A program made the position numbers and the translations under genes. From assembly GCF_006345805.1 (NCBI RefSeq), contig NC_043004.1, positions 41,044,001-41,108,000 of the forward strand: a DNA stretch of 64,000 nucleotides, read 5' to 3'. Source of the DNA: Octopus sinensis. Lineage: Eukaryota. The notes below the pieces were generated by a model. It saw only the letters and a program-made list of their open reading frames with translations, searched no databases and had not been told where the DNA came from. Positions 1,890 to 20,809 of this stretch are shown in pieces. Numbering within the stretch: the stretch's first letter is position 1; every line of letters starts with the position of its first letter.

Positions 1890-2225
1890 AAAGCCTACTT
1901 CAAATGATCTCCCTTCTGAGATTGTTCGGAAAACATCTTATGATATATTACTGAACTATCCGCATATGTACAGATCAACGAGGCACTCCAGCCACTTGAC
2001 CAGAAGCATGCCTACGACACTATCGTTCAGCAAGTCCAGGGTCGTAAGGGTGGCAACAGCTGTGACAACTTTGGGCATAGCTGCTACTCTGCACCCTGGT
2101 GGTAGGACTGCACACTCTACGTTTAAGCATCCCCTTAACCTCGCAAGTTCACCAATGCCTGTTTGCAACCACAATGCTGATTGTTTGGGATGAATGCACA
2201 ATGGCTCACAAGGTTGCCCTTGAGG
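1890..2225 (+). pseudogene. Helitron Pif1-like helicase fragment
   Basis: ORF 1876-2193 contains VATAVTTLGIAATLHPGGRTAHSTFKHPLNL, matching the Helitron helicase motif VASSGIAATLLPGGRTAHSxFKxPL. Confidence 0.72.
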
Positions 2226-2233
2226 CATTAGAC

Positions 2234-2483
2234 GGTGTGGGATGACGTCAGCAGCTGGGGTTATCCGGAAGGAGCAGCCGTGAGGTGCGCGCAGCGAGCG
2301 GCGATATCGGCCTTACGAATGAGGGCCGTCGACGTGTTAAGACGTTGCTAAGGTTGGGTGAAGCAGCTGCTATCTTTAGCGTTCGGGTCGGGGCTGTGTT
2401 GAAGGATCCGTTACCACTGAAGAGTCTCCATCAGAGTGAAGAGAAGGTAGGTGCCTTTATATTCGAATCTTGCACACACTACA
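2234..2483 (+). mobile_element. Gypsy 5' LTR (5'-truncated)
   Basis: Homologous to 8590-8849, which follows an integrase end and purine tract. Ends in cacactACA directly before the gag ORF. Confidence 0.65.
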
Positions 2484-2518
2484 AGCTATTTCGGCATTCC
2501 ACATAAGTCGTCACCACG

Positions 2519-2998
2519 ATGTCTGCAAAAATTAGGATCGCCAGCGACATCATCAGACCCTTTAATGGTGAAGGCAATGTAGTGGCCTGGATTCATAAAG
2601 TCAGGCTGGTGGCAAGACTGCAAGGTATAAGCGATGTGGCAAGTCTTATGGCGCTGTATTTAGAAGGGAGTACGTTGATGCTATATCTTGAGATGGAGGA
2701 GGAGGAACGCCTGAGCGAGGAAAAGATAGAGCAACGTTTGCGGGATGCCTACACAGAATGTGAATACACAGCTTTTGCTAAGCTAGGTACGATCAGATGG
2801 ACAGGAGGACAGGTGGACGATTATGCGGCAGAAGTTAGAAGGTTAGCGACACCGGCTGGGTTTACGAGAGAAGGGCTGGAGAGAGCAGCGCGGCTGGCGT
2901 TTGTAAATGGGTTCCCCAACGATGTAGGGATTCACCGACGATTGCCCGGGATTAAAAAGATGGCGCTGAGCGAACATGTGACTCAGGCCCGCGTGTTG
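2519..2998 (+). pseudogene. Ty3/Gypsy gag fragment
   Basis: ORF 2519-3040 (IRPFNGEGNVVAWIHKVRLVARLQG...) is homologous to 16246-16700, which continues into zinc knuckles, protease and integrase. Truncated at ~2998. Confidence 0.75.
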
Positions 2999-4723
2999 AA
3001 AAAATTATTATTTAAGTTAAAAAATTATTTACTTTGCTAAAAAAATATTATTATTAAATATGTTGTATGATATGTATAGTATCGTCCGAGATTTCGATAC
3101 CACATATTCCTTCCTAAAGGAAAAGAAAGTTTTGAATGACGTATCTCCGCATTGTGTGCAATGCCAGAGAGAAATGACTCTCATAAAATACAACAAAGAA
3201 AAAATATTTCGCTGCCCAACACACAAAGGTGAAAAAGTATCTATTAGGAAGAAATCCTACCTGGAAAACCCTAAAATAAAATTACGTGACTTCATACATG
3301 TAACAGTTTTATGGAGTAACAACATACCAATATCATCAACAATAGAATTGACTGGATTGGCCAAAACTACTGTTATTCAGTGGTTTCAATACATGCGTGA
3401 CATCTGTAGTCACAATCTTGTCATTAACCCGTACCAAATTGGTGGGGTTGGGCACATCGTGGAAATTGATGAATCCATGATGTGCAAGAGAAAATATAAC
3501 AGAGGTAGGATGCCACAGGAGAGATGGGTTTTCGGAGGATGGGACAGAGAAGACAATAAAGGTTTTTTAGTGTTCGTACCTACACTGTCATAAAATTGCT
3601 ACAATGTCATAAAAAAGAAAATGAAGGTATGTACAACATATATTTCTGTTTATTCGTATAAATCATTGAAATTGTTGCACAGAAACGAATACACCAATCA
3701 TGCACTCTTTCTATATCACCCCACTCCATTTTTCGAACCGCAATTCGTTCAAAGAAAAAAAAAAAAAAAAATCCAATTCGCCAACCCCTTTTCTGAACCA
3801 AAATATGGGATTTGTAGCATATTAGGGTAAGGAGGTCAAAGTACTTGATTCCACGCAAAAAATCCGAATTTAAAAAAAAAAAATTTTCCCTTAGTGAAAA
3901 TTGCGACCATGTATGTTGAATATTTTAATCGTGTCCTAACAACTACATACAAAGAACTCAAACACACACACACAAACGTGTGTGTTTGTTATTAGTAAAA
4001 AGGGCGCCAAACAATATTCAGTTTCTCATTCGAACACATTTGCAAACACACCGACGGTCGAATTGCCATAACTCAACAGAAAAGGTGAATTGGTTTTTAA
4101 TTTATTTTCTGTCGCTAAATTTTGGTAGTGTACTTCAGTTGTCAATTGTTGAGCGGCAGGTTTGGTAGTCTTCAACTAACACTATCTCCTCCGAGACCCT
4201 GCAGCGCAAGTTGACCAAAATTGAGAGTATGATAGAAGAAGGGTTGCTCTTTCTTCCGTAGAAGATAAAATTCAAATTGGACCATGTTAACACCAAAAAT
4301 TATTTACATAAAAAAGCTGCTTTTTTCTATGAAAATCCCTATTTTATAACATTTTTTCACTGCTGTGTCGCCACACAGAAAAATGTTCACTTGAACACAA
4401 TAACAAACTACATAATGCAAAATTTTTACTTTTCGAAAATTCCAATTCCAGCAGGTCGAAACAAACCCGACCAACAAATTTTTTTTTTAAATTTTTCCTT
4501 GGGGGGGGGGGCCCTAACTGAACGACCACGTATGTTGAATATTTTAATCGTGTCCTTTAAACTGCTATAAGAAACATAAAATCCGAATTAAAAAAAAAAA
4601 ATTTCCTTAGTGAAATTGCAGGGGGTGGAACGCGCATGCGTGAATCACGCAAGTCACCTCGTAGGATCGAGTACCTACGTCTGGCTAGTGCGCAAACCGG
4701 GACCAGTCTACGATACTAGTACC
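2999..4723 (+). mobile_element. Merlin (IS1595/ISXO2-like) DNA transposon, right half, with transposase fragment 3060-3593
   Basis: The ORF has CxxC...CP, WFQYMRDIC and GGVGHIVEIDESMMCKRKYNRGR...WVFGG, typical of Merlin transposases. The terminus ...actagtacc (4723) reads GGTAC on the other strand. The left end is missing. Confidence 0.8.
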
Positions 4724-4900
4724 CTTCTGCCAACCTACATGGGGAGACAAACTGCTCGTGTAAGGGTGAAAGAAGTGCCACCTGAAGTTGATGCAAGGGA
4801 GGTGATGGCCGCCTTGTTGCATAACAGGACAGACAAAATCGCCTTCTTTCAGATCACACGCTCTGCCCCACGAAACTGGCTCGGGCAGAGCATTTCTGCC
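4724..4900 (+). pseudogene. Non-LTR retrotransposon ORF1-like fragment (type a)
   Basis: LLPTYMGRQTARVRVKEVPPEVDAREVMAAL resembles LMPNSLDKRIARIRVGRIPPSIEPEWII of the repeated ORF at 6335. The ORF1 assignment is inference. Confidence 0.45.
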
Positions 4901-6310
4901 ATTATTCAAGACGGCTTCAAGACAGCTGCGGGAACTCTGACCCAGATTCACGATTTGGAGGAGTCAGTGTGATGGCCGTTGGGGATCTCTATCAACTGCA
5001 ACCTGTAGGCCAGAATCACGTCTTTGGCTTCCTGAGAGACAACTACACCTGCTTCCATGGATCTCTGTAGGAGGAAAACTTCAAAGTGATGGAACTCACA
5101 GAGAGCATGCGACAAAAGGAAGATCAACGTTTGGCCCAATTATTGACGAGGGTCAGGACAGCTGCCTGCACGGAAGATGGTATAACCTTGCTTAAGACCA
5201 GAGTCATCACCAAAGAAGACACTGACTACCAAGTGAACGCCTTTCACGTGTTTAAGACGAACAAAGAGGTTGATGAACACAACACAGAACACCTCGAGCT
5301 GTTTCATCTGATTTATGACATCAAAGCTATCGACAAAAAGAAAGCCGTCCAGACTGGCCTTACTGATGTTCCCATTTACACGAAGGCATCAGATACTGGC
5401 AACCTCAGGGAAGTACTGTCTGTAGCAGTTAGCGCTAGAGTGATGATAACTGTCAACATAGACATCTCTGACAGTTTGGCAAATAGCGTCTGTGGTACAG
5501 TTGTCACGATTGACAACACTGGTAGTGACATCCATACAATCCTCATCAAATTTGACAGTGAATGGGTAGGTAAGCAGGCCATCGCTGACAGCCAGTACAA
5601 GAGGTCATTCCCGGGAGTAGTTCCCATCAAATGACTGGATGTTCAGCTCTATACCAGGAGGGGCAGACAATCTGTGGAAGCAAAGCGTTCGTAACTTCCT
5701 CTCTCACTGGCCTGGGGTTGCACCATATATAAAGACCAGGGCAAGACCATGGATAAGATTGTCGTTGCCATGCAAGGAAAAAGTTCCTTCATGCTTGGCC
5801 ATGCATATGTTGCCTTCAGTTGTGTCCAACACTTCAGTGGCCTCTTCTTGCTTGGATCTGATGCCACTGCAATCCGCACTAGTCCATCTGTTGTTCGTGA
5901 AATGGAGAGGCTTCGACGGCAAACGTTGTCTGAAACTTTGCCTTCTGCTGCTCCCACAGTTACTCATGGAGGACTGCAAATCAGACTGCTCAAAATCAGG
6001 TCCTTCTTTGAACATGAACAAGACTTGAAAGCAGATAACACTCTTCAAAATGTTGATGTAGTTTTTGTTTCGTGGAAGCGTTCTTGAAACAGAATCAACA
6101 AGTAGCATCCATCTTACTGCAGTCGAAGATCACTAGAACAACAGGCCTGCTGCACTGGGGTGTGGAGGTGGGGTGATGACTGTTGCCAAGAAGGAGATCG
6201 CCCCCACGGATAGACATTTCAATGTCAGTGGCTAGAGTACCCCACTGTCAGGGTGACCATCCCGTCAACAAAAATCAATTTACAGATCTCCTTCTGTACC
6301 AGTTGCTCCT
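4900..6310 (+). pseudogene. Helentron-type Pif1 helicase C-terminus plus AP-like (EEP) endonuclease fragment, copy 1
   Basis: Contains FGGVSVMAVGDLYQLQPV, MELTESMRQKED, ARVMITVNIDISDSLAN and [25 protein letters not shown]...HAYVAFS. This is followed by an EEP-like stretch (DR...GGGVMTVAK...GLEY). Frameshifted. Confidence 0.8.
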
Positions 6311-6334
6311 TTTCTGATACAGAAATATTACAGT

Positions 6335-6745
6335 ATGGTAGAAAAGGATGGGTCAAATATAAAAATGACTCTGCCACAGGAGGAAAAAGTTAAAATGGAA
6401 AAGAAGACCGTCATTTTCAGATCATTTTCAAATAAAAATAGACAAACTGAATACACACCGCAGGAAGAAATAGAAGAAATTTTGGAAGAACAGATAGGAA
6501 AGAGCATAACGTTCTTTACGAGAGGGAAGACATATGCGTCGATAGTGGTAACCCTTGTATCAGAAGAGGAGGCGGAAAATACCTCCAACAGGCTGATACA
6601 GGGAGAGAAATGGAATTTGATGCCAAACAGTTTGGACAAACGAATTGCCAGAATTAGGGTGGGAAGAATCCCACCATCGATAGAACCAGAGTGGATAATA
6701 GTGTCGATTTTTTATTCAGAGATGAGGAGAGGAGGGGAATGGTAA
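6335..6745 (+). pseudogene. Repeated 136-aa ORF, non-LTR ORF1/RRM-like fragment (type b), copy 1
   Basis: Near-identical ORFs at 9079, 11501 and 13857. The family assignment is tentative. Confidence 0.5.
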
Positions 6746-7190
6746 ACAAAATGGGAATGAAAGTCAATATACTGTGAAAAAACATTAAAAAGTGGGCGTT
6801 TTTTCAGACAAATTGGCGAGATTTTCTAATTTTGGGCAATGGAAAATTGAAAAAATTCACCATGGGTATGGTAAAGAGGTATATTTCCTTCATTTCAGTG
6901 ACATCTAGGGCGTTAATAGACAAATATTTCCAATGGTTACCTGTGTATCACAAATTTCCACTTTTAATCGCCTCAAGACACCTTTACTTATAAAAAAAGC
7001 TGTTGCCCTAATGACAAGTGAAAATGTCATCCCCGTAGACCCAGGAACAATGTGGTACCATCAAACTAAAGTTGGAGGGAAGTGGGTGCAACCAACTCAA
7101 TAAATAAGGCCCTTTTTGGATTTGGCCCACCGACTACATCTTTCAGCCCCAAAATGTTGAGCTGAAGCAATGACAATTGACCAAGGTTAA

Positions 7191-8188
7191 ACATACCTCG
7201 ACCGTGTCCTTGCCCCCCTAGTGGCGTCTCTTCCCTCCCACATCCACGACACCAACCATGCTCTCCGGCTTTTCAACTCTTTCTCCTTTCCTCCCGGCTC
7301 CTCCAAAATACTTTTTACTATGGACATCCAGAGCCTCTATACCGTCATCCCTCACCACAAAGGACTGCGGGCCCTTCAACACGTTCTCGACCTCTGCCTC
7401 AACCCCGAACCCGACACCTCCACACTCATTTGTCTGGCCGAACTTGTCCTTTCTCTCAACTGCTTCTCGTTCGCGGGCGAGTTCTACCAACAGGTCTCGG
7501 GAGTGGCCATGGGAACGCGAATGGGCCCCAACTATGCCAACCTGTTTGTTGGCTATGTTGAGCCCCAAATATTCTCTAATTTCACTGGTCCCACTCCCGA
7601 ACAATACGGTCGTTACATTGATGACATTATCGGTGCCACCTCACTCTCCCGTGAATATCTAGATTCCTTCCTCTCTTTCGTTCAATCCTTCCATCCTGCC
7701 CTCCACTATCTCCTACACCTCTGTCTCCTTCCTTGACATTTCGGTCAGCATTCATCACTCCACTCTTACCACCTCCATTCACTACAAACACACAGACTCA
7801 CACTCATACCTAAACTTCTCTTCCTCCCACCCCAAACACACCAAGCTTTCCATCCCCGATTCCTCCGTCTACGTAGGCTCTGTAGTGACAACCATGACTT
7901 TGAGACTCAGTCTCAACTCGTGGCTTGCCACTTCATCCTACGTGGATACCCCTCACCACTATCCACACCGCCCTCGCCAGAGCACGTTCCGTAGACCGTG
8001 CATCTACTCTCTCCCCCCGAACATGCCCTGTAGTCTCCCGCCTCCCCTCACTTACCACCCCACCACCCTACCTCTCCAACGCCCCATTCTTAGAGCTTTC
8101 CGGCATCTCCAGTCCGACCCGTCCACATCACACCTCTTCCCTAACCGAGCCCTCCCCTCCTTCAAACGAGCCCATAACCTACGAGACC
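7191..8188 (+). mobile_element. Penelope-like element (PLE-1) reverse transcriptase fragment, copy 1
   Basis: ILFTMDIQSLYTVIPH, YQQVSGVAMGTRMGPNYANLF and YGRYIDDIIG are PLE RT motifs. Frameshifted downstream. Confidence 0.88.
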
Positions 8189-8849
8189 AATCTGGACAAG
8201 CTGAGGAATCTGTGCCACAGAGAGCTGTATTCAAATATGAATGGAGGCACCCGAGCAAAGCGCCGGACGGTCACGAGAAAGAGAAGAGGCCCGTCTGCGT
8301 GAAAATAGGGGAGGAAGTCTGGGCTAAGCCACCAAAGGCGCGCTGTACGTCTCAATGGAGCAGAGGAATGGTGACGGCGGTCAATTCCAGAAACAACGTC
8401 TCCATGGATGGAATGCCACGACACGTCTTGGACCTTGGCAGGATTGTCGCTTCGACGGACGACGATTATGGAGAGGGGGAGAACGAGGTGTCCAGCTTGA
8501 GAAAATCTCGACGCTCAAGGTGCCCTCCCGGTTGGACGGTGGACTACGACATGGAGTAGAGAGATTGTGATCTTTAAGATCAGGGTGGCGTATGGGATGA
8601 CATCAGCAGCTGGGGACCGGAACTGGGGTCAACTGGAAGGGGCAGCCGTTAAGCGCGCAGCGAGCGCTGACCTCGGCGTTTCGAACGAGGGTTGTCGACG
8701 TGTGAAGACGTTGCTAAGGTTGGGTGAAGCAGCTGCTATCTTTAGTGTTTGGGTCGGGGCTGTGTCAAAGGATACATTACCACTGAAGGGTCTCCATCAG
8801 AGCGAAGAGAAGGTAAGTACCTTTATATTCGAATCTCACACACACTATA
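8187..8849 (+). mobile_element. Gypsy integrase C-terminus, polypurine tract and 3' LTR (8566-8849)
   Basis: Matches 18358-18570 (SGQAEESVPQRAVFKYE...VWxKPPKARC). The stop at 8559 sits in a purine-rich ggagtagagaga tract, followed by TG...ctata LTR homologous to 2234-2483. Confidence 0.75.
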
Positions 8850-8890
8850 GACGGAACTTTACGAGACATAGAGGGAAGCCACAAATAGAT

Positions 8891-9053
8891 ATACTTTTTA
8901 CTATGGACATCCAGAGCCTCTATACCGTCATGCCTCACCATGAAGGACTGCGGGCCCTTCAACACTTTCTCGACCTCTGCCTCAACCCCGAACCCGACAC
9001 CTCCACACTCATTCGTCTGGCCGAACTTGTCCTTTCTCTCAACTGCTTCTGGG
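8891..9053 (+). mobile_element. Short PLE-1 RT fragment
   Basis: Near-identical to 7308-7470 (ILFTMDIQSL...LSLNCF). Confidence 0.8.
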
Positions 9054-9065
9054 GACTTTAGACGA

Positions 9066-9429
9066 AGAAAAAGTTAAAATGGAAAAGAAGACCGTCATTT
9101 TCAGATCATTTTCAAATAAAAATAGACAAACTGAATACACACCGCAGGAAGAAATAGAAGAAATTTTGGAAGAACAGATAGGGAACAGCATAACGTTCTT
9201 TACGAGAGGGAAGAGATATGCGTCGATAGTGGTAACCCTTGTATCAGAAGAGGAGGCGGAAAATACCTCCAACAGGCTGATACAGGGAGAGAAATGGATT
9301 TTGATGCCAAACAGTTTGGACAAACGAATTGCCAGAATTAGGGTGGGAAGAATCCCACCATCGATAGAACCAGAGTGGATAATAGCGTCGATTTTTTATT
9401 CAGAGATGAGGAGAGGAGGGGAATGGTAA
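9066..9429 (+). pseudogene. ORF1-like repeat, copy 2 (5'-truncated)
   Basis: ORF 9079-9429 is near-identical to 6395-6745. Confidence 0.5.
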
Positions 9430-9876
9430 ACAAAATGGGAATGAAAGTCAATATACTGTGAAAAAACATTAAAAAATGGGCGTTTTTTCAGACAAATTGG
9501 CGAGATTTTCTAATTTTGGGCAATGGAAAATGAAAAAAATTCACCATGGGTATGGTAAAGAGGTATATTTCCTTCATTTCAGTGACATCTAGGGCGTTAA
9601 TAGACAAATATTTCCAATGGTTACCTGTGTATCACAAATTTCCACTTTTAATCGCCTCAAACTCACCTTTACTTATAAAAAAAGCTGTTGCCCTAATGAC
9701 AAGTGAAAATGTCATCCCCGTAGACCCAGGAACAATGTGGTACCATCAAACTAAAGTTGCAGGGAAGGGGGTGCAACCAACTCAATAAATAAGGCCCTTT
9801 TTGGATTTGGCCTACCGACTACATCTTTCAGCCACAAAATGTTGAGCTGAAGCAATGACAATTGACCAAGGTTAAA

Positions 9877-10587
9877 CATACCTCGACCGTGTCCTTGCCC
9901 CCCTAGTGGCGTCTCTTCCCTCCCACATCCACGACACCAACCATGCTCTCCGGCTTTTCAACTCTTTCTCCTTTCCTCCAAAATACTTTTTACTATGGAC
10001 ATCCAGAGCCTCTATACCGTCATCCCTCACCATGAAGGACTGCGGGCCCTTCAACACTTTCTCGACCTCTGCCTCAACCCCGAACCCGACACCTCCACAC
10101 TCATTCGTCTGGCCGAACTTGTCCTTTCTCTCAACTGCTTCTCGTTCGCGGGCGAGTTCTATCAACATGTTCACGGGAGTGGCCATGCGAACACGAATGG
10201 GCCCCAACTATGCCAACCTGTTCATTGGCTATGTTGAGGCCCAAATATTCTCTAGTTTCACTGGTCCCACTCCCGAACTATACGGTCGTTACATTGACGA
10301 CATTATCGGTGCCACCTCACTCTCCCGTGAACATCTAGATTCCTTCCTCTCTTTCGTTCAATCCTTCCCTACATTTCACCTGCACTATCTCCAACACCTC
10401 GGTCTCCTTCCTCGACATTTCGGTCAGCATTCATCACTCCACTCTTACCACCTCCATTCACTACAAACACACAGACTCACACTCATACCTAAACTTCTCT
10501 TCCTCCCACCCCAAACACACCAAGCTTTCCATCCCCTATTCCCAATTCCTCCGTCTACGTAGGCTCTGTAGTGACGGCCATGACTTT
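9877..10587 (+). mobile_element. PLE-1 RT fragment, copy 2
   Basis: Same RT motifs as copy 1. Carries a 9-bp deletion (cggctcctc) shared with copy 4. Confidence 0.85.
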
Positions 10588-11480: not shown

Positions 11481-11500
11481 TGATACAGAAATATTACAGT

Positions 11501-11911: not shown

Positions 11912-12358
11912 ACAAAATGGGAATGAAAGTCAATATACTGTGAAAAAACATTAAAAAATGGGCGTTTTTTCAGACAAATTGGCGAGATTTTCTAATTTTG
12001 GGCAATGGAAAATTTTTAAAATTCACCATGGGTATGGTAAAGAGGTATATTTCCTTCATTTCAGTGACATCAAGGGCGTTAATAGACAAATATTTCCAAT
12101 AGTTACCTGTGTATCACAAATTTCCACTTTTAATCGCCTCAAGACTCACCTTTACTTATAAAAGAAGCTGTTGCCCTAATGACAAGTGAAAATGTCATCC
12201 CCGTAGACCCAGGAACAATGTGGTACCATCAAACTAAAGTTGGAGGGAAGTGGGTGCAACCAACTCAATAAATAAGGCCCTTTTTGGATTTGGCCCACCA
12301 ACTACATCTTTCAGCCCCAAAATGTTGAGCTGAAGCAATGACAATTGACCAAGGTTAA

Positions 12359-13371
12359 ACATACCTCGACCGTGTCCTTGCCCCCCTAGTGGCGTCTCTT
12401 CCCTCCCACATCCACGACACCAACCATGCTCTCCGGCTTTTCAACTCTTTCTCCTTTCCTCCCGGCTCCTCCAAAATACTTTTTACTATGGACATCCAGA
12501 GCCTCTATACCGTCATCCCTCACCACGAAGGACTGCGGGCCCTTCAACACTTTCTCGACCTCTGCCTCAACCCCGAACCCGACACCTCCACACTCATTCG
12601 TCTGGCCGAACTTGTCCTTTCTCTCAACTGCTTCTCGTTCGCGGGTGAGTTCTACCAACAGATCTCGGGAGTGGCCATGGGAACGCGAATGGGCCCCAAC
12701 TATGCGAACCTGTTTGTTGGCTATGTTGAGCCCCAAATATTCTCTAATTTCACTGGTCCCACTACCGAACAATACGGTCGTTACATTGATGACATTATCG
12801 GTGCCACCTCACTCTCCCGTGAACATCTAGATTCCTTCCTCTCTTTCGTTCAATCCTTCCATCCTGCCCTCCACTATCTCCTACATCTCTGTCTCCTTCC
12901 TTGACATTTCGGTCAGCATTCATCACTCCACTCTTACCACCTCCATTCACTACAAACACACAGACTCACACTCATACCTAAACTTCTCTTCCTCCCACCC
13001 CAAACACACCAAGCTTTCCATCCCCTATCCCTCCGTCTAAGTAGGCTCTGTAGTGACGACCATGACTTTGAGACTCAGTCTCAACTCGTGGCTTGCCACT
13101 TCATCCTACGTGGATACCCCCTCACCACTATCCACACCGCCCTTGCCAGAGCACGTTCCGTAGACCGTGCATCTACTCTCTCCCCCCGAACATGCCCTGT
13201 AGTCTCCCGTCTCCCCTCACTTTCCACCCCACCACCCTACCTCTCCAACGCACCATTCTTAGAGCTTTCCGGCATCTCCAGTCCGACCCGTCCACATCAC
13301 ACCTCTTCCCTAACCGTGCCCTCCCCTCCTTCAAACGAGCCCATAACCTACGAGACCAATCTGGACAAGCT
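12359..13371 (+). mobile_element. PLE-1 RT fragment, copy 3
   Basis: Near-identical to copy 1 (offset ~5168 bp); lacks the 9-bp deletion. Confidence 0.85.
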
Positions 13372-13835
13372 GAGGAATCTGTGCCACAGAGAGCTGTATT
13401 CAAATATGAATGGAGGCACCCGAGCAAAGCGCCGGAGGGTCACGAGAAAGAGAAGGGGCCCGTCTGCGTGAAAATAGGGGAGGAAGTCTGGGTTAAGCCA
13501 CCAAAGGCGCGCTGTACGTCTCAATGGAGCAGAGGAACGGTGACGGCGGTCAATTCCAGAAACAACGTCTCCATGGATGGAATGCCACGACAAGTCTTGG
13601 ACCTTGGCAGGATTGTCGCTTCGACAGACGACGATTACTGCAGTCGAAGATCACTAGAACAGACAGGCCTGCTGCACTGGGGTGTGGAGGTGGGGTGATG
13701 ACTGTTGCCAAGAAGGAGATCGCCCCCACGGATAGACATTTCAATGTCAGTGGCTAGAGTACCCCACTGTCAGGGTGACCATCCCGTCAACAAAAATCAA
13801 TTTACAGATCTCCTTCTGTACCAGTTGCTCCTTTT
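13370..13835 (+). mobile_element. Gypsy integrase tail (13370-13637) fused to Helentron EEP fragment (13635-13835)
   Basis: The first part matches 8187-8469 and the second matches 6115-6310; they are joined at a shared TTA. Confidence 0.75.
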
Positions 13836-13856
13836 CTGATACAGAAATATTACAGT

Positions 13857-14267
13857 ATGGTAGAAAAGGATGGGTCAAATATAAAAATGACTCTGCCACA
13901 GGAGGAAAAAGTTAAAATGGAAAAGAAGACCGTCATTTTCAGATCATTTTCAAATAAAAATAGACAAACTGAATACACACCGCAGGAAGAAATAGAAGAA
14001 ATTTTGGAAGAACAGATAGGAAACAGCATAATGTTCTTTACGAGAGGGAAGAGATATGCGTCGATGGTGGTAACCCTTGTATCAGAAGAGGAGGCGGAAA
14101 ATACCTCCAACAGGCTGATACAGGGAGAGAAATGGATTTTGATGCCAAACAGTTTGGACAAACGAATTGCCAGAATTAGGGTGGGAAGAATCCCACCATC
14201 GATAGAACCAGAGTGGATAATAGCGTCGATTTTTTATTCAGAGATGAGGAGAGGAGGGGAATGGTAA
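13857..14267 (+). pseudogene. ORF1-like repeat, copy 4
   Basis: 136-aa ORF near-identical to 6335-6745. Confidence 0.5.
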
Positions 14268-14716
14268 ACAAAATGGGAATGAAAGTCAATATACTGTGAA
14301 AAAACATTAAAAAATGGGCGTTTTTTCAGACAAATTGGCGAGATTTTCTAATTTTGGGCAATGGAAAATGAAAAAAATTCACCATGGGTATGGTAAAGAG
14401 GTATATTTCCTTCATTTCAGTGACATCTAGGGCGTTAATAGACAAATATTTCCAATGGTTACCTGTGTATCACAAATTTCCACTTTTAATCGCCTCAAGA
14501 CTCACCTTTACTTATAAAAAAAGCTGTTGCCCTAATGACAAGTGAAAATGTCATCCCCGTAGACCCAGGAACAATGTGGTACCATCAAACTAAAGTTGGA
14601 GGGAAGTGGGTGCAACCAACTCAATAAATAAGGCCCTTTTTGGATTTGGCCCACCGACTACATCTTTCAGCCCCAAAATGTTGAGCTGAAGCAATGACAA
14701 TTGACCAAGGTTAAAC

Positions 14717-16245
14717 ATACCTCGACCGTGTCCTTGCCCCCCTAGTGGCGTCTCTTCCCTCCCACATCCACGACACCAACCATGCTCTCCGGCTTTTCAA
14801 CTCTTTCTCCTTTCCTCCAAAATACTTTTTACTATGGACATCCAGAGCCTCTATACCGTCATCCTTCACCACAAAGGACTGCGGGCCCTTCAACACTTTC
14901 TCGACCTCTGCCTCAACCCCGAACCCGACACCTCCACACTCATTCGTCTGGCCGAACTTGTCCTTTCTCTCAACTGCTTCTCGTTCGCGGGCGAGTTCTA
15001 CCAACAGGTCTCGGGAGTGGCCATGGGAACGCGAATGGGCCCCAACTATGCGAACCTGTTTGTTGGCTATGTTGAGCCCCAAATATTCTCTAATTTCACT
15101 GGTCCCACTCCCGAACAATACGGTCGTTACATTGATGACATATCGGTGCCACCTCACTCTCCCGTGAACATCTAGATTCCTTCCTCTCTTTCGTTCAATC
15201 CTTCCATCCTGCCCTCCACTTCACCTCCACTATCTCCAACACCTCTGTCTCCTTCCTCGACATTTCGGTCAGCATTCATCACTCCACTCTTACCACCTCC
15301 ATTCACTACAAACACATAGACTCACACTCATACCTAAACTTCTCTTCCTCCCACCCCAAACACACCAAGCTTTCCATCCCCTATTCCTCTGTCTACGTAC
15401 ACTCTGTAGTGACGACCATGACTTTGAGACTCAGTCTCAACTCATGGCTCGCACTTCATCCTACGTGGATACCCCCTCACCACTAACCACACCGCCCTTG
15501 CCAGAGCACGTTCCGTAGACCGTGCATCTACTCTCTCCCCCCGAACCTGCCCTGTAGTCTCCCGCCTCCCTTTTCCCCTCACTTACCACCCCACGACCCT
15601 ACCTCTCCAATGCACCATTCTTAGAGCTTTCCGGCATCTCCAGTCCGATCCGCCCACATCACACATCTTCCCTAACTGACTCCTCCCCTCCTTCAAATGA
15701 GCCCATAACCTACGAGACCTCTTGGTCCATAGCTTCTTCCCTGACCCTACCTCCCAACCTGGCTTGTTCCCCTGCTCCCGCCCACGTTGCCGCACTTGCC
15801 CTTACCTCTCCAACACCACCCTCCTCACTGGCACCCATCATCGACCCTATCGCATCATCAACTCCTTCACCTGCACCTCCAGCTCTCTCTGCCATTCCCT
15901 GTACATCGCTTGGCTGACCGGTTCGCGAACACCTCCGTGACATTCGCCTTGCCAATGACACACCGGTCTCATGCCATTTCTGCTCCACCGGTCACTCCCT
16001 GCAACACCTGTCTGTGTTCGGATTGTCCCTGCACAGAGGCCATCCGGATTCCCGTTTTGCGCCTTAAACAGGGATTAATCTTCTCTCTTCGCTCTTTTAC
16101 GCCATTTGGTCTCAACTCTTCCCCCCTTTTCATCTAACCCACCCCAACTCCTACTTCTCTTCAGTCCTTCATCTTTTCACTCCTACTCTCTTCCCTCCTC
16201 TTCTCTTCTTCTTTCCTCTTTCTTCTCTCTGCTACCTCACTCCCT
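14717..16245 (+). mobile_element. PLE-1 copy 4: RT plus degenerate GIY-YIG endonuclease and pyrimidine-rich 3' end
   Basis: RT motifs as above, then PGLFPCSRPRCRTCPY...SFTCTSS...LYI and ...LKQGLIFSLRSFTPFGLNS, the typical PLE linker and GIY-YIG C-terminus. Confidence 0.85.
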
Positions 16246-18628
16246 TCCCTTTAATGGTGAAGGCGATGTAGTGGCCTGGATTCATAAAATCAGGCTGGTG
16301 GCAAGACTGCAAGGTATAAGCGATGTGGCAAGTCTTATGGCGCTGTATTTGGAAGGGAGCGCGTTGACACTATATCTTGAGATGGAGTAGGAAGAACGTC
16401 TGAGCGAGGAAAAGATAGAGCAACGTCTGAGGGATGCTTACACCGAGTGTGAGTATACAGCTTTTCCTAAGCTGGGTACGATTAAATGGACGGGAGGACA
16501 GGTGGACGACTACGTGGCAGAAGTTCAAAGGTTAGCGACGCTGGCTGGGTTTACGGAGAAGGGCTGGAGTGAGCAGCGCAACTGGCATTCGTAAATGGGT
16601 TCCCCGATGACGTAGGGATTCACCTACAACAATTGCCTGGGAGTAAAAAGATGGCACTGAGCGAACTTGTGACTCAAGCCCACGTGTTGATGCCACACTC
16701 CGGGTGGAAGGCGATAGCGATGGCGGTGACGGAGCTGCGTAAAGACAGCTGACGGCTGGAGAAAGACGTGCAGAAGTCTACCGTGCAACGACAGCAGCCG
16801 TTCTCAGGTCAGTGTTTTAGATGTCAGGGGTTGCACATGGTGAGGGAGTGTACGCAACCGGGGCCCGTTTGCTATCAATGCAGGCAGACAGAGCACATCG
16901 CACGTGATTGCGACCAGGGAAACGACCGCAGGGAAGTTGCTGCCTCTCGAACTTGCCCCGCAAACGAGTAGAGGTGCTTTTGGAGATGCTGCCATTAATT
17001 GATGTCGAGGCCAAGGGGAAGATGTTCAAGGCCCTCGTGGATACGGGCTGCAAGACCACCCGTGTGACTTCAAGAGTGACAAAGAAATGGAATGGGGCAA
17101 GTAGCGTCTGAGCTGTCGACGGCAGCGAAATCCATTGCAAAAGCAGCAGCAAGGTAGAGATAGTGGTGGGAGGCGCAACGCTAAGGCTGCAGGTAATTGT
17201 GGCTGAACGCGTGATAGATGGGGTTGATGTGGTGATGGGGATGGACACCATCAACTGCCTCGGTGGCGTCAGTATTGTGGGAGATGAGGTCACGTTCGGA
17301 AGCGTGGGGGCATGTGCACTGTGAGTCAGGATCGCCAGAGAGAGCAGAGCCCCGTGAGGGACTGCGCCACTTACACCATCGAGGACAAAGATTTTCAGGC
17401 GGCATTTGATGGTCAGCGGTGGACGATAGAGTGGCGATGGAAGAACGAGCCCCCGATGCTGAAAAACAGAGTGAGCTGCTACCAGCATACCCTGAAAGGC
17501 CACGCCAGGGTCGAGTTTGAAGACGAGGTGGAGAGGTGAATCGAGGAAGGGGTTCTTGTCTCTTGGGAGGAGGAGGTAGCGGGCGGAGTGATCACCGGTG
17601 TAAGGAGAGTTTGGATGAAAGGTGCTGCGGAGATGTTGGTGAAGCACCATCTAGGAGAATTGATCGCCGAGTTTGGACTGAAGCTGAACGTGGTTTTCGT
17701 GCCTTTGGAGAAAAACAGGGCGGACGCACTGACCAGGGTGAAATGGGTGTGGTTGGAGAAACTGGAGGAGGCCCGGAAAGGGATAGCTGTGGCGTGTCGG
17801 TTGGATGACTCTGAACTGAAGAGACTGCATGGTATGCATCACTTGGGTGTGGACAGGACCCTGTATCTGGCAAAGAAAATTGATGCTGACATCACAAGGA
17901 GAAGCATCCGGAAAGTGGTCGGGAGCTGCGACAGGTGTCAGTCCATTGACCTTGCTCCATGTGGGCATGAGCAAGGAAACCTTTCGGTGGAGCACAACTG
18001 GAAAAGGCTAGCTGTGGATGTGACGCACTACCACCAGGGAATGTATCTCTCCATGGTCAACTGCGGGCCGGGGCGGCTGGCCATGTGGAGGGAGTTGAGA
18101 ACAGGCATTGCTGACGAGATTGCGCAGATCTTGAACGGCATATTTTTAGAGAGAGGTCCCGTGGAAGAACTGCTAATGGACAACGGGGCGGCGCATTGAG
18201 GGATATGCTTAACCGGTGGAAGGTGTGTCACTTGTTCAGAGCAGCGTATAGGCCCAGCGGTAACGGGATCATAGAGAGGCATCATCGGACAGTCAAGGCC
18301 ATAGCGGAAAGAGGGCACATTTCGCCACTCGAAGCAGTTAGTTGGTACAACTTGTCTCCCCAATCCGGACAAGCTGAAGAATCTGTGCCGCAGAGAGCTG
18401 TATTTAAATATGAATGCAGGCACCCGAGTAAAGCGCTGGAGGGCCACGAAGAAGAGAAGGAACCTGCTTACGTGAAAATAGGGGAGGAAGTCTGGGTTAA
18501 GCCACCAAAGGCGCGCTGTATGTCTCAATGGAACAGAGGAACGGTGACAGCGGTCAATTCTAGAAACAACGGGAGAAGCAGCTGCTATTTCTAGTGTTTG
18601 GGTTGGGCTGTGTTGAAGGATCCATTAC
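16246..18628 (+). mobile_element. Internally deleted Ty3/Gypsy element: gag, zinc knuckles, protease, RT largely deleted, RNase H tail, integrase, LTR remnant
   Basis: CFRCQGLHMVREC and CYQCRQTEHIARDC knuckles; ALVDTGCKT protease; HHLGVDRT...CDRC, LAVDVTH, LMDNG and RPSGNGIIERHHRTVK integrase motifs. Contains stops and frameshifts. 18575-18628 is LTR interior. Confidence 0.88.
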
Positions 18629-18652
18629 CGCTATATATATATATATATATAT

Positions 18653-20660
18653 AGAAGACCAACACCTCGGATAAAACCACAAATGAGGACATACTCAAAG
18701 AACTGAAAAATATTAATACACAGCTTATTAACCTGAACAACAAAATCGAGGAATCAAACCTACTCGCCCGGGAAAGTAAAAGCAATGAAGATACAACTCG
18801 CTACACTGACCAGGCTAGTAAGGATTTGCAACTGTTATATACAACACTAAATTCAATTTTCATCAACAAATCCGAAAATAATAAACACGCACCAAATGAA
18901 ACACAGCAGGACATCATACACACCCAAATTAACCCAGCAAAAAGAAAAATAGGAAACATTTGGAATACAAACCTGCACAACAGAAAACTCGCCTTCTGGA
19001 ACATGATAAAAAATTCCAACAAAGCAGATATTTACGAGGGATGGATGAACTCAACACCAATTATCCTCCCACGCAAATTCCAGATAAAATTAATTCCTAA
19101 CGAGCCTGACGGACAGAGAACTATTAGGGAAAAGTCAGCTCTGTTCAATTTAAGATCAGAAATAGAGCTTCTAAGACTAAGGGCCTCCACAAATGAAGAA
19201 AAATTTAAAAGCATAGACGAGGAGATGCACAATATAATACAGAAACATACCGAGGGACAACCCCTCTAAAATACATTAGATCATTGGAAGGATACCTGTG
19301 AAAAAGAAGAGAGAAATTCTCTCCTGCGCTGGGAGAAAAACATGGACTTCTTCCAAAAATATAGTGCAACTTTCAAAAATGAATTGGGTACAAATAATCC
19401 CTTCCTTAAGAAAATTACAAAAAATAAAAAAGAAAAACCAAACAACCCCCAACTATCCTCCATACACTAAAAACAGAAATCACCCACAACCAACCTTTGC
19501 AAACCACGCAAGACCTAACAGGGAACTAGCTGACAGACGACGCGTCTATGAAATAAATTACACCAAAAACAGAACACACCAACAACATCCTAATACCAGA
19601 CCCAACCACCATACAGCACAAAACGACACTAGAATAAGAAATACACCACACACAAGTCACTACTACCCCATGAACCAAAATTACTGGTCCCCACTAAACA
19701 CAAGACAAACGCAAAAAAACACTATGTCAAGCAACATCCCACATACAAGCAATTCGAAACAAAAATATTTCCCATACAGAAATTTTACACACACCACAAA
19801 CAAAATCAACCATAGATTCCCACACACACACAACGATCGGGGGCAACAATACCACCACTCCCCCAACCAAATACCACACAACCTCACAGGCAACTCATAC
19901 AAACAAAATTACACCCAACATTTTTTAGCGAGGGACCAGGGACACCAGGACACAGGCTGGAACCTAGTAATAAGGAAAAAAAACAACACACCTTCCCCGA
20001 AAATACTACCTTACATATCCACATACAACCCCAGAAACAAAGAAGCCTTCACCATCATCACCCAGAATTTACCAACACTTCATAAAGACCCCAAATTAAA
20101 GGAAATTCTAAACATACACCAAATCATTAAAAGCTACAAACAGCCTAAATCACTTAAAAAGATTCTCACAAAGGCAAAATTGTCTTCTGAAATTACGGAT
20201 GCAAAAGTAAAACAAATGTGGTAGATCGAACTGTGCAACATGCCCTAACCTGCTAGAAGGATCAGAATTCCTCTTTAAAGAGGGACAGAAATTCAAGATC
20301 AAATCTAACTTTACTTGTGCCTCTGAAAACATAATTTATGTCATAAAATGCTCGGGCTGCCACCAAGACTACGTGGGTTCCACAGGACTATCACTCAGAT
20401 GTAGATGCACACTGCATTGACAACAAATTGCATTCCCAGAATATAGAATGATACCTTTTAGTGAGCACATTGAGAAATGCGCAAAGCAACTACTACCACA
20501 ATTTTTAATCTTTCCATTTTACCAATGTGCTTTCGGATCATCAACACAAATTAGACTAAACAAGGAAACATTCTTCATTGAAAAGTACAAGCCCAGACTC
20601 AACCATCCGAACATACTGATACAGAGAAATTCACACCAAGGGAAAGGAAAAAATTTTTAA
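18653..20660 (+). mobile_element. Second Penelope-like element (PLE-2): N-terminal region plus GIY-YIG endonuclease, RT absent
   Basis: C-terminus has YKQPKSLKKILTKAK...CGRSNCATC...FTCASENIIYVIKCSGCHQDYVGST...ETFFIEKYKPRLN. No RT motifs are seen. It starts after a (TA)n tract. Confidence 0.8.
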
Positions 20661-20769
20661 GCGATTATCTCCCTTACACCGGAAGAAATCACTCACTACC
20701 TTCCCTTATTTAGAACTCTCCTGAACTTAAACATAACGAAAACTCTATTCAACATAAACATAACGTCGC

Positions 20770-20809
20770 AAGAAATTTGAAAAGCTACACGCGAAACCGG
20801 TCTTTCTTT
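20770..20809 (+). ncRNA. Degenerate minimal hammerhead ribozyme candidate at the PLE-2 3' end
   Basis: aagaaat-ttgaaaa-gc tacac gc-gaaa-ccgg-tc-tttctt. GAAA, a palindromic CCGG stem III, a GUC site and stem I potential are present; the CUGANGA core carries two substitutions. Confidence 0.4.

What the first reader, a model, noticed from the sequence alone, without database searches (positions are those of the whole stretch)
1890..20660. 19-kb mosaic of about eight transposon sources, every fragment on the same strand
Seen: Helitron helicase, Gypsy, Merlin transposase, two different ORF1-like pieces, Helentron helicase/endonuclease and two different Penelope-like elements are butted together, all coding on +. 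If eight sources were oriented independently, this would occur 1 time in 128. Remnants at 23-57 kb are mixed in orientation (piggyBac -, mariner +, Merlin +, piggyBac +, hAT -, PLE -, mariner -, CR1 -). Inference, two models: (a) a unistrand flamenco-like piRNA cluster, since minus-strand transcription (for example read-through from the zinc-finger gene ending at 24494) would be antisense to every fragment; (b) a chimera stitched from sense TE RNAs by reverse-transcriptase template switching, reminiscent of the co-oriented cargo of bdelloid Terminon PLEs.
Basis: partly seen in the sequence, partly recalled or inferred. Interest (0 to 1): 0.82.

Follow-up and report, generated by a model that had tools for sequence, protein, structure and literature searches.

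The report
Same-strand transposon mosaic built by copying
The 19-kb same-strand patchwork of transposon pieces in this octopus-like genome is real, but the pieces share a strand mainly because they were carried or copied together, so it is a decayed transposon graveyard and not good evidence for a piRNA cluster or a giant Terminon-like element.

Summary
Pieces of about eight transposon families lie in 1864-20997, and every piece with recognisable coding homology reads on the + strand. They are not eight independent orientation events.

- 2236-8849 is a single LTR-bounded unit of 6,614 bp, which I call G*. It has two LTRs and a 5-bp target-site duplication (GACGG). Joining its flanks restores one PIF1/Helitron helicase frame.
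- Inside G*, about 2.6 kb of pol is replaced by 5.2 kb of sense-oriented fragments: Merlin-like, two ORF1-like pieces, a second PIF1 helicase and a Penelope-like RT.
- 8891-16246 is a head-to-tail chain of partial re-copies of that cargo. The copies are 96-100% identical, against about 87% for the LTR pair. The joins have 1-3 nt microhomology and short fillers.
- The second "ORF1-like" piece and Penelope #2 are one element (18653-20997). Octopus vulgaris copies match it at 92-94%; the window copy has lost 1.6 kb.

That leaves about 5 independent orientation events, or 9 at most. A run of 5 or more occurs by chance in 27-42% of such windows.

I found no zinc-finger gene at 24494. The piRNA-cluster reading is untested and weakly motivated. 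The Terminon analogy fails. An RT template-switch origin stays plausible only in a different form, with the LTR element as the vehicle.

The parts
1864..2235 (+). Decayed Helitron-type PIF1 helicase remnant, left part. It is the target of the LTR-element insertion.
   Evidence: Pfam PIF1 hit. After correcting one frameshift the hit covers profile 52-123 at 46 bits. It reads ...LIVWDECTMAHKVALEALDG up to 2235.
2231..2235 (.). Target-site duplication, copy 1 (GACGG)
   Evidence: The same 5 nt lie at 8850-8854, directly outside the two LTR ends.
2236..2483 (+). 5' LTR of the composite LTR unit G* (TGTGGGATGAC...CACACACTACA)
   Evidence: Aligns with 8591-8849 and with the post-integrase region of the O. 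sinensis copy, L001 11099-11387.
2519..3000 (+). gag of LTR element G (copy G-a). Homology to other G copies stops at about 2999.
   Evidence: 89% nt identity to 16247-16690 and 83% to L001 7666-8191. 74-86% aa identity to L001.
3021..3590 (+). N-terminal half of a Merlin/IS1595-like transposase, 3'-truncated
   Evidence: 43% aa identity to 28861-29013, whose neighbouring ORF at 29132-29359 hits NF033547 IS1595 transposase at E=8e-6. There is no direct Pfam hit.
3591..4591 (.). AT-rich unassigned stretch holding an interspersed repeat (4155-4470). Orientation unknown.
   Evidence: 4155-4470 matches 62928-62591 on the minus strand at 83% and O. vulgaris L003 17269-17568 at 84%. No Pfam hits.
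4592..4890 (+). R': C-terminal fragment of a second ORF1-like (RRM-type) family
   Evidence: tblastn to O. vulgaris L003 64321-64473 at 57%, and weak similarity to the R copies. 4717-4869 matches L003 64297-64445 at 74% nt.
4894..6313 (+). 6063-6313 might be the start of an AP-endonuclease, which is unconfirmed.
   Evidence: Pfam PIF1 profile 119-158. Collinear PDB PIF1 matches to about chain residue 408-460. The APE reading is by eye only and has no Pfam or PDB support.
6314..6733 (+). R: an ORF1/gag-like fragment (RRM-type), matching residues 31-163 of a 257-aa Octopus protein that carries a CCHC knuckle
   Evidence: P0035 at 48% and P0036 at 72%. zf-CCHC in P0035. R occurs alone in O. vulgaris at L003 10088-10493 and L004 36981-36583.
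7000..8188 (+). Penelope-like element 1 (PLE-1): RT and thumb, 5'- and 3'-truncated. Joined in frame to the integrase C-terminus at 8188.
   Evidence: RVT_1. 34-49% aa identity to PLE proteins P0012, P0016 and P0019. The start is set by eye; homology begins at about 7140. The junction is shown.
8187..8590 (+). Integrase C-terminus of G (copy G-b) plus the polypurine tract
   Evidence: 52-61% aa identity to Octopus sinensis LOC115217217 (P0003) and to rve-domain proteins. AAGATCAGGGTGG lies just before the LTR.
8591..8849 (+). 3' LTR of G*
   Evidence: About 87% identical to the 5' LTR. Ends ...CACACACTATA.
8850..8890 (+). TSD copy 2 (8850-8854) plus 36 nt that continue the Helitron helicase (TLRDIEGSHKQID)
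   Evidence: Joining the flanks restores the frame. The PIF1 hit then extends to profile 134 and gains 10.8 bits.
8891..9063 (+). 160-nt PLE-1 RT fragment (matching 7308-7467) followed by a 13-nt filler, GGGGACTTTAGAC
   Evidence: 99.4% identical to 9983-10142. The filler is unique in the window.
9064..10587 (+). X2: partial copy R-PLE-1 (matching 6380-7901)
   Evidence: 95.8% identity. Shares two indels of about 10 bp with X4.
10581..13637 (+). U3: a copy of G*-internal 5417-8468 (helicase C-terminus, R, PLE-1, integrase C-terminus), including the same PLE|integrase junction
   Evidence: 97.6% over 3,057 bp. Junction sequences are identical.
13635..16246 (+). X4: a copy starting at the equivalent of 6114. 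It is the only copy with the PLE-1 3' part, comprising the CxxC/GIY-YIG region (15719-16134) and a 15-nt tandem-repeat tail (16147-16208).
   Evidence: 96.6% to 6114-8188. tblastn of P0012 and P0016 runs through residues 423 and 460. GIY-YIG lies at residues 390-428 of P0016. TRF result. TTA microhomology at the 5' join.
16247..18632 (+). G-c: a separate, older copy of LTR element G. It runs from gag residue 14 through the start of pol, the RNase H end and the integrase to an LTR fragment, and lacks the RT core.
   Evidence: 87-88% nt identity to O. sinensis L001 7748-9092 and 9957-10961; 865 bp of L001 is absent. 77-83% aa identity to P0003. About 89-90% identity to G-a and G-b.
18653..20997 (+). 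PLE-2: one Penelope-like element (ORF1 plus the ORF2 C-terminus and 3' end) with a 1.62-kb internal deletion between 19980 and 19982. (TA)n lies on both sides.
   Evidence: 18653-19980 matches L004 6008-7347 at 94%, and 19982-20947 matches L004 8968-9932 at 92%; L005 gives the same picture. Full copies have a 455-aa ORF1 and a 621-aa ORF2 with RVT_1. EN-region homology at 20214-20429. Ends shown.

Best explanation
The block is a fossil transposon junkyard in an octopus-type genome. Its same-strand look is inherited through copying, not produced by eight independent insertions or by selection.

SHOWN
1. An LTR retrotransposon unit, G* (2236-8849), inserted once into a decayed Helitron helicase and made a 5-bp target duplication.
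2. In G* the pol region, about 2.6 kb in the O. sinensis relative, is replaced by 5.2 kb of partial fragments from at least five other elements. All are in the sense orientation and are joined internal-to-internal.
3. Directly downstream, 7.4 kb (8891-16246) is a head-to-tail chain of partial copies of the same cargo. The joins have 1-3 nt of microhomology, plus a 13-nt filler and a 160-nt snippet.
4. A further, older G copy (16247-18632) and an ordinary internally deleted PLE (18653-20997) close the block.

INFERRED
- The internal-to-internal sense joins arose by copy-choice. The most likely route is RT template switching: LTR-mediated capture for G*, and possibly PLE 5' template jumps for the helicase|R|PLE-1 composite.
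- The young chain arose at the DNA level, by one or a few break-repair or replication events with serial template switches that used G* and the X4-type copy as nearby templates.
- Nothing in the block is intact. Every long gene is frameshifted or truncated, so I infer no present function.
For: A SINGLE INSERTION
- The LTR pair is 2236-2483 and 8591-8849, and the TSD GACGG lies at 2231-2235 and 8850-8854.
- Joining the flanks gives LIVWDECTMAHKVALEALDG|TLRDIEGSHK. The PIF1 hit then grows from profile 52-123 (46 bits) to 52-134 (56.8 bits).

REPLACEMENT OF POL
- gag homology stops at 2999 and integrase homology restarts at 8187. These points correspond to L001 8191 and 10750.

THE CARGO IS NOT SIMPLY NESTED
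- No second half of any cargo element is present.
- The inner helicase overlaps the outer one on the PIF1 profile (119-158 against 52-134), so they are two different genes.
- The chimeric 298-aa ORF at 7663-8556 is half PLE and half integrase. No database protein spans both halves; the highest coverage was 60%.

RE-COPYING
- Identical junctions recur at 8188/13357 and at 6113/11277.
- The copies are 96-100% identical by substitutions, against about 87% for the LTR pair.
- Two indels of about 10 bp split the copies into X1/X3 and X2/X4, which fits two templates.
- The microhomologies are TTA, CC and T, with fillers.
- All repeats are direct; none is inverted.

OTHER POINTS
- PLE-2 is an ordinary family member.
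- G occurs as a stand-alone element in O. sinensis, with no PLE or helicase beside it.
- The architecture matches published LTR-mediated retroposition (PMC5131818).
Against: - I could not search the source genome. No window ORF is in the protein collection, so I do not know whether G* or its junctions exist elsewhere.
- The microhomology at the one G*/cargo junction I could resolve is only 2 nt. The published LTR-mediated cases have a median of 6 bp (PMC5131818).
- A more complete cargo source (X4) lies only about 5 kb from G*. That is an odd coincidence if the cargo was captured as RNA before integration. It suggests DNA-level copying into G* instead, or gene conversion that hides the true ages.
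- The co-orientation of the remaining roughly 5 independent units (Helitron, G*, the X4 source, G-c, PLE-2) is put down to chance at 1/16. A piRNA-cluster or transcription-unit bias would explain it equally well.
- The tandem part could be an assembly artefact.
Confidence: 0.6

Rival explanations
1. A unistrand (flamenco-like) piRNA cluster, or a piRNA-producing extension of a minus-strand transcript. Minus-strand transcription through 21 to 1.9 kb would give RNA antisense to every fragment, and insertions in that orientation would be retained.
For: - All recognisable fragments are on +.
- The region is a dense graveyard of fragments from many families, with local duplications, as known clusters are.
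- The PIWI/piRNA pathway and TE-rich piRNA clusters exist in molluscs (PMC6128900).
- This reading is compatible with the structural history given in the best explanation.
Against: - The orientation signal shrinks to about 5 independent events. A run of 5 or more occurs by chance in 27-42% of comparable windows.
- The co-oriented block is only 19 kb, and orientation is mixed immediately to the right.
- The proposed upstream zinc-finger gene is not there.
- There are no expression data, and I found no octopus piRNA-cluster data.
Confidence: 0.13
2. Plain nesting and decay. The elements inserted one into another independently, happened to share a strand, and later deletions trimmed them. Ordinary unequal crossing-over made the tandem copies.
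For: - G* did insert into a Helitron, and PLE-2 is an ordinary separate insertion, so nesting does occur here.
- The region is old: the LTR pair is about 13% diverged, which leaves time for many deletions.
Against: - None of the five or more cargo elements shows a second half or its own ends or TSD inside G*.
- All seven joins are internal-to-internal. This model would need five or more same-strand insertions and six or more precise deletions, all confined between two LTRs and a TSD that stayed recognisable.
- A simple tandem duplication cannot produce X4, which is longer than X2 at both ends and keeps a 3' part that G* lacks.
Confidence: 0.17
3. The whole 19 kb, or the 8891-16246 chain, is a single RT product built by serial template jumps on sense TE RNAs.
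For: - The chain is strictly head-to-tail and ends in a PLE-1 copy with a complete 3' end and tail (X4).
- The segments fall into two template types, as expected for two RNAs.
- The joins have 1-3 nt of microhomology and a 13-nt filler.
- PLEs are known for complex partial tandems (PMC8557442).
Against: - The block is not one unit. A TSD-bounded LTR unit, 36 nt of target Helitron, a separate G copy and a separate PLE-2 lie in series.
- The upstream PLE-1 copies are 3'-truncated, the opposite of PLE pseudo-LTRs.
- Both PLE families have GIY-YIG-region homology. There are no telomeric repeats and no hammerhead motifs, so the Terminon features are absent.
- The use of local templates only, and the young age of the copies relative to G*, fit DNA repair synthesis at least as well.
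Confidence: 0.1
4. Assembly artefact. The 96-98% identical tandem copies in 5.4-16.2 kb are mis-joined reads from dispersed copies or from two haplotypes.
For: - High-identity repeats of 1.5-3 kb are hard to assemble.
- PLE arrays are known to cause assembly problems (PMC8557442).
Against: - The window has no N runs.
- The copies differ by specific indels and have distinct, clean junctions with microhomology.
- The LTR unit with its TSD is internally consistent.
Confidence: 0.07

Closest known systems
LTR-mediated retroposition or transduction: chimeric LTR retrotransposons such as maize Bs1 and the Drosophila and vertebrate cases of Tan et al. 2016 (PMC5131818)
   Same: - G* has two LTRs and a TSD.
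- The LTR-element parts are discontinuous (gag ... integrase C-terminus), and internal ORF sequence is replaced, not interrupted.
- The foreign pieces are partial, come from several parents, are all in the sense orientation, and are joined with short microhomology.
   Different: - The cargo is other transposons, not host mRNAs.
- The resolvable microhomology is 2 nt, against a median of 6 bp.
- A more complete copy of part of the cargo lies 5 kb away, which is unexpected for capture before integration.
- Secondary mobility (other copies) could not be tested.
Complex rearrangements by serial template switching during DNA repair or replication (MMBIR/FoSTeS-type; named from my own knowledge)
   Same: - The 8891-16246 chain uses only nearby templates.
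- It has 1-3 nt of microhomology, a 13-nt filler and a 160-nt snippet.
- Its copies are much younger than the surrounding insertion.
   Different: - All four segments are direct; such events often include inverted segments.
- No second allele or outgroup is available to show the state before the event.
Drosophila flamenco-type unistrand piRNA cluster
   Same: - A dense graveyard of truncated TEs from many families that share one strand, with local duplications.
   Different: - The block is only 19 kb, with about 5 independent orientation events and mixed orientation next door.
- No promoter, transcript or small-RNA evidence is available.
- Co-orientation here is explained by descent.
Bdelloid Terminons (giant Athena-based PLE composites; PMC8557442, PMC6431247)
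   Same: - Co-oriented ORFs of mixed origin lie in a block that includes PLE RT sequence.
   Different: - The PLEs here are EN+ (GIY-YIG region present).
- No PLE terminus bounds the block, and there are no telomeric repeats or hammerhead motifs.
- The block breaks down into an LTR unit, re-copies and separate insertions.
Penelope-like element partial tandems (pseudo-LTRs)
   Same: - PLE-2 relatives in O. vulgaris show the classic upstream partial direct or inverted copy and a (TA)n tail.
- PLE-1 copies lie head-to-tail.
   Different: - In the window the upstream PLE-1 copies lack the 3' end, whereas pseudo-LTRs arise from upstream copies that keep the 3' end.
- The repeat unit also carries helicase, ORF1-like and integrase pieces.

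Membership tests
LTR retrotransposon insertion (unit G*, 2236-8849) | Two direct terminal repeats with TG...CA-type ends | tested here: met
   The LTRs are 2236-2483 (TGTGGG...CTACA) and 8591-8849 (TATGGG...CTATA), about 87% identical. Both ends of the 3' copy are mutated at one base.
LTR retrotransposon insertion (unit G*, 2236-8849) | Short target-site duplication and a restorable empty site | tested here: met
   GACGG lies on both sides. The joined flanks read through as PIF1 helicase, and the Pfam score rises from 46 to 56.8 bits.
LTR retrotransposon insertion (unit G*, 2236-8849) | gag-pol interior with PR-RT-RH-IN | tested here: not met
   Only gag (to about 2999) and the integrase C-terminus (from 8187) remain. 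Foreign TE fragments lie between them. G* is therefore a non-autonomous chimera.
LTR-mediated retroposition chimera (PMC5131818) | Foreign sequence replaces part of the internal ORFs, flanked by discontinuous parts of one LTR element, in the sense orientation | tested here: met
LTR-mediated retroposition chimera (PMC5131818) | Microsimilarity at the switch points beyond chance | tested here: inconclusive
   The PLE-1|integrase join has 2 nt. The gag|Merlin join cannot be resolved without a Merlin reference.
LTR-mediated retroposition chimera (PMC5131818) | [quoted passage not shown] | not testable with these tools
   The source genome is not searchable. No window ORF is in the collection, and no database protein spans the junction.
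Unistrand piRNA cluster (flamenco type) | Strand-specific piRNA production from a long single-strand precursor | not testable with these tools
   No RNA data are available.
Unistrand piRNA cluster (flamenco type) | TE orientation bias beyond chance across independent insertions | tested here: not met
   About 5 independent events remain after collapsing co-transported and re-copied parts. A run of 5 or more is expected in 27-42% of windows. With the liberal count of 9 events the figure would be 2-5% per window.
Terminon / Athena-type PLE composite | An EN-deficient PLE RT at the 3' end, telomeric repeats and hammerhead motifs, and a unit bounded by PLE features | tested here: not met
   Both PLEs have GIY-YIG-region homology. 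Rfam found no hammerhead. The block breaks down into separate insertions.
Penelope-like elements (PLE-1, PLE-2) | [quoted passage not shown] | tested here: met
   X4 aligns with P0016 through its GIY-YIG segment (residues 390-428), and RVT_1 is present. PLE-2 has RVT_1 in full O. vulgaris copies and EN-region homology at 20214-20429.
Helentron (inner helicase, 4894-6313) | A Rep-helicase protein followed by an AP endonuclease | tested here: inconclusive
   The PIF1 helicase is confirmed. The endonuclease reading of 6063-6313 got no Pfam or PDB support. No Rep domain is present.

The most novel reading that the evidence does not exclude
G* is a transducing LTR retrotransposon that packaged RNAs of at least five other transposon families and stitched them, by reverse-transcriptase template switching, into one mobile non-autonomous unit. 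The locus may also be kept as a trap that feeds antisense piRNAs. If so, octopus LTR elements would shuffle and spread pieces of rival transposons, as retroviruses do with host genes.
Probability: 0.15. Interest if true: 0.55.

Novelty: new member of a known kind. Interest (0 to 1): 0.27.

Why it matters
- For a genome scan, the lesson is about method. Same-strand runs of TE fragments must be collapsed into independent events (LTR-bounded units, re-copied segments, multi-ORF elements) before orientation statistics are read as a piRNA-cluster signal.
- Biologically, the locus gives a clean empty-site-proven example of an LTR element whose pol was replaced by pieces of several other transposons. 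Beside it lies a chain of microhomology-joined re-copies.
- If the chimera proved to be mobile or a piRNA source in cephalopods, it would be a useful case of TE-on-TE capture. As it stands, it is an ordinary decayed repeat region.

Tried and rejected
- **Helicases as one gene.** I first thought the two helicase pieces (1864-2190 and 4825-6113) were one gene split by an insertion, because the PDB matches were collinear. I rejected this. The outer helicase continues at 8850-8890 after the LTR unit is removed, and the two overlap on the PIF1 profile.
- **6114 as an element end.** I first took 6114 for a natural 5' end. It is only a breakpoint, because the reading frame runs across it.
- **A simple 5.17-kb tandem duplication.** Rejected, because X4 is longer than X2 at both ends and the spacers differ.
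- **The PLE|integrase join as a deletion within X4...G-c.** Rejected, because the integrase pieces are only 89-91% identical while the PLE copies are 97-98%.
- **Rolling-circle concatemers.** Rejected, because the junctions are not at a constant unit boundary.
- **R as the PLE-1 N-terminus.** Rejected, because R occurs alone in O. vulgaris and in a 257-aa stand-alone ORF.
- **Searches that found nothing:**
  - Rfam, for hammerheads and other families.
  - tRNA genes.
  - Pfam and PDB, for an AP endonuclease at 6063-6313.
  - An exact look-up of ten window ORFs, to find the source genome or other copies.
  - A search for the rest of the outer Helitron helicase anywhere in the window.
- **P0036.** This O. 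vulgaris protein looked like another ORF1-integrase chimera, but it is a gene model spliced over 50 kb.

Full report
**What is there**

The window contains no N. G+C rises from about 0.34-0.39 in the flanks to 0.42-0.53 across 2-20 kb. Stop-to-stop ORFs and homology searches place TE-derived coding remnants on the + strand throughout 1864-20997.

- Two PIF1-type helicases.
- The gag and integrase of one LTR-retrotransposon family, which I call G.
- An IS1595/Merlin-like transposase N-terminus. The support is indirect, through a second Merlin-like remnant at 28.8-29.4 kb.
- Two ORF1-like fragments of RRM/CCHC type, R and R'.
- Two Penelope-like elements.

None of the minus-strand ORFs I scanned in the block has a Pfam match. 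The repeat finder reports only direct repeats. To the right, orientation is mixed:

- piggyBac - and piggyBac +;
- Merlin +;
- PLE -;
- mariner-like pieces on both strands, judged by eye only.

**Host**

The integrase region at 17633-18579 is 77-83% identical in protein to Octopus sinensis LOC115217217. The second PLE is 92-94% identical in DNA to copies in Octopus vulgaris. The flanks share many short interspersed repeats with an O. sinensis locus at 80-95%. The window therefore comes from an octopus or a close relative. None of ten window ORFs is present in the protein collection, so I could not search the source genome for further copies.

**The pieces are not independent**

Self-comparison shows extensive internal copying:

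| Segment | Matches | Identity |
|---|---|---|
| 5417-8468 | 10581-13637 | 97.6% over 3,057 bp |
| 6114-8188 | 13635-15719 | 96.6% |
| 6380-7901 | 9064-10587 | 95.8% |
| 8891-9050 | 160 nt of RT sequence | 99.4% to 9983-10142 |

About 10 kb of the 19 kb is thus one composite (helicase C-terminus, R, PLE-1, integrase C-terminus) present in two to four partial head-to-tail copies.

**The key structural result**

Aligning the sequence upstream of gag (2180-2530) with the sequence after the integrase (8540-8900), and with the O. sinensis relative, defines an LTR.

- The 5' copy is 2236-2483 and the 3' copy is 8591-8849, preceded by a polypurine tract.
- Directly outside the two ends lies the same pentamer, GACGG, at 2231-2235 and 8850-8854.
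- Joining 1864-2235 to 8855-8890 gives the continuous reading LIVWDECTMAHKVALEALDG-TLRDIEGSHK.
- With the 13 residues from the right flank added, the Pfam PIF1 match extends from profile 52-123 (46 bits) to 52-134 (56.8 bits).

This is an empty-site demonstration. Everything in 2236-8849 (6,614 bp, 'G*') entered a decayed Helitron helicase as, or within, one LTR-retrotransposon insertion. The inner helicase (4894-6113) covers PIF1 profile 119-158 onward.

**Inside G***

Homology to other G copies runs from the LTR through gag to about 2999 and resumes in the integrase C-terminus at 8187. In the O. sinensis copy these points are 2.56 kb apart (L001 8191 and 10750). In the window that pol segment is replaced by 5.19 kb, in this order:

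1. Merlin-like N-terminus (3021-3590).
2. About 1 kb of unassigned AT-rich DNA with an interspersed repeat.
3. R' (4592-4890).
4. The inner helicase (4894-6113), perhaps with an endonuclease start up to 6313. I could not confirm the endonuclease.
5. R (6314-6733).
6. PLE-1 RT (about 7000-8188).

Every piece is partial, and no second half of any piece is present. All joins are internal-to-internal. The PLE-1|integrase join is in frame and gives a 298-aa chimeric ORF. Its two halves match different protein families, and no database protein covers both.

This is the architecture described for LTR-mediated retroposition: a discontinuous LTR element, with internal ORF sequence replaced by partial sense copies from several parents (PMC5131818). 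It is not what simple nesting produces.

**Downstream of G***

After the TSD and 36 nt of Helitron, the sequence runs as follows.

1. A 160-nt PLE-1 snippet and a unique 13-nt filler.
2. X2, equivalent to 6380-7901.
3. U3, equivalent to 5417-8468, which includes the same PLE-1|integrase junction.
4. X4, equivalent to 6114 onward.

The joins show 1-3 nt of microhomology: T at X2|U3 and TTA at U3|X4. The inherited PLE-1|integrase junction has CC.

X4 alone keeps the PLE-1 3' part, with the CxxC/GIY-YIG-region homology and a 15-nt tandem-repeat tail. X4 therefore cannot derive from G*. Conversely, G* holds helicase sequence that X4 lacks. Two indels of about 10 bp group X1 with X3 and X2 with X4, as expected if two templates, a G*-type and an X4-type, were copied.

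By substitutions the copies are 96-100% identical, with a mosaic pattern; U1 and X4 are 100% identical over 6114-6313. The two LTRs of G* are only about 87% identical. So the re-copying, or homogenisation by gene conversion, is much younger than the integration of G*.

The chain uses only templates that lie within a few kb, and it reads as a left-to-right series of copied segments. I therefore favour a DNA-level break-repair or replication event with serial template switches for the chain. An RT-mediated chain is not excluded.

**The right end**

- 16247-18632 is a separate, older G copy. It is about 89-90% identical to G-a and G-b and 87-88% identical to the O. sinensis copy. It starts at gag residue 14 and lacks the RT core.
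- 18653-20997 is a single PLE-2. O. vulgaris copies (L004, L005) are collinear with it and carry an extra 1.62 kb between window positions 19980 and 19982.
- Those O. vulgaris copies also show the classic PLE partial direct or inverted upstream copy and a (TA)n tail (compare PMC8557442).
- PLE-2 is therefore an ordinary, internally deleted insertion. The block ends at about 20997, not 20660.

**Statistics**

The units whose strand could have been set independently are the Helitron remnant, G*, the X4-type source composite, G-c and PLE-2. That is five events, and P(all on the same strand) = 1/16. If every cargo family inside G* is counted as independent, the number rises to nine.

In simulated windows holding 12-18 independently oriented fragments:

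| Same-strand run | Share of windows |
|---|---|
| 5 or more | 27-42% |
| 6 or more | 12-21% |
| 8 or more | 2-5% |

The boundaries were also chosen after the fact. The '1 in 128' figure is not justified.

**Interpretations**

- **Model (a), piRNA cluster.** It loses most of its sequence-based support, and its proposed driver is absent. I found no zinc-finger gene ending at 24494. There is no convincing C2H2 pattern in any frame. The ORF at 24497-24895(-) has no zinc-finger Pfam match. It belongs to an uncharacterised repeated family, and the eight longer members I scanned have no Pfam domain. The model remains possible, because TE graveyards are typical piRNA sources and molluscs have the pathway (PMC6128900). 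Only RNA data can decide.
- **Model (b), RT template switching.** The idea is plausible for the internal-to-internal sense joins, but with an LTR element as the vehicle. The Terminon comparison fails on every feature I could test: the PLEs have GIY-YIG-region homology, there are no hammerheads, no PLE end bounds the block, and the block breaks down into separate insertions.

**Verdict**

This is a real but ordinary decayed TE nest. Its anatomy is instructive: an LTR chimera proven by its empty site, followed by a chain of re-copies joined at microhomologies. The shared strand is mostly inherited. Interest is low to moderate.

Noticed in passing
window 46995-47400, 52397-52822, 61188-61545, 38748-39065 (-), 26648-26971, 21932-22184 (-): A short interspersed repeat of about 350-400 bp occurs at least six times in the window, on both strands. 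It matches several copies in the O. sinensis locus L001 at 70-93%, so it looks like an abundant octopus SINE-like family.
   Followed up: partly
window 27229-27423, 42664-42855, 44371-44562 (-), 48777-48967, 60575-60754 (-), and others: A second interspersed family of about 170-190 bp translates to '...WVGRFDRGSGKPEGCTRLQS...LQLDALPNANHSESVVGAF'. It is scattered on both strands and is also present in L001.
   Followed up: no
The eight I scanned have no Pfam domain. It is probably an uncharacterised repeat or TE-derived family.
   Followed up: partly
window 21204-21459 and 21614-21762: Two tandem arrays lie just right of PLE-2: a 102-nt unit in 2.5 copies (75% matches) and a 37-nt unit in 4.1 copies (98% matches).
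   Followed up: no
window 3904-3937 and 4523-4556; 3856-3904 and 4575-4619: Near-identical direct repeats of 34 nt and 49 nt bracket about 590 bp that contain the interspersed repeat at 4155-4470. This may be the footprint of an insertion inside the AT-rich part of the G* cargo.
   Followed up: no
L003 10001-60742, L004 6001-57064 and L005 6001-40270 (O. vulgaris GCA_951406725.2): Several O. vulgaris 'hypothetical predicted protein' gene models (P0036, P0038-P0041) begin with an exon taken from a transposon ORF1 and are spliced over 34-51 kb. One is fused to DGCR6. These are probably annotation chimeras.
   Followed up: partly
L005 5117-5981 (+) and 3447-2429 (-); L004 5920-5308 (-): Full PLE-2 copies in O. 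vulgaris are preceded by a partial direct copy and/or an inverted copy of their own 3' part and end in (TA)n. This is the textbook PLE pseudo-LTR arrangement with a microsatellite association.
   Followed up: partly
L001 7666-11387 (O. sinensis CM016869.1): The stand-alone relative of element G lies between a Vps39-like gene and an HD-domain gene. It has a 3' LTR-like region, but no matching 5' LTR was detected upstream of gag.
   Followed up: partly
window 18001-20000: The sense strand of PLE-2 has a very strong A-over-T skew (AT skew 0.36). All three + frames therefore stay open for long stretches, and ORF length there is not evidence of coding.
   Followed up: no
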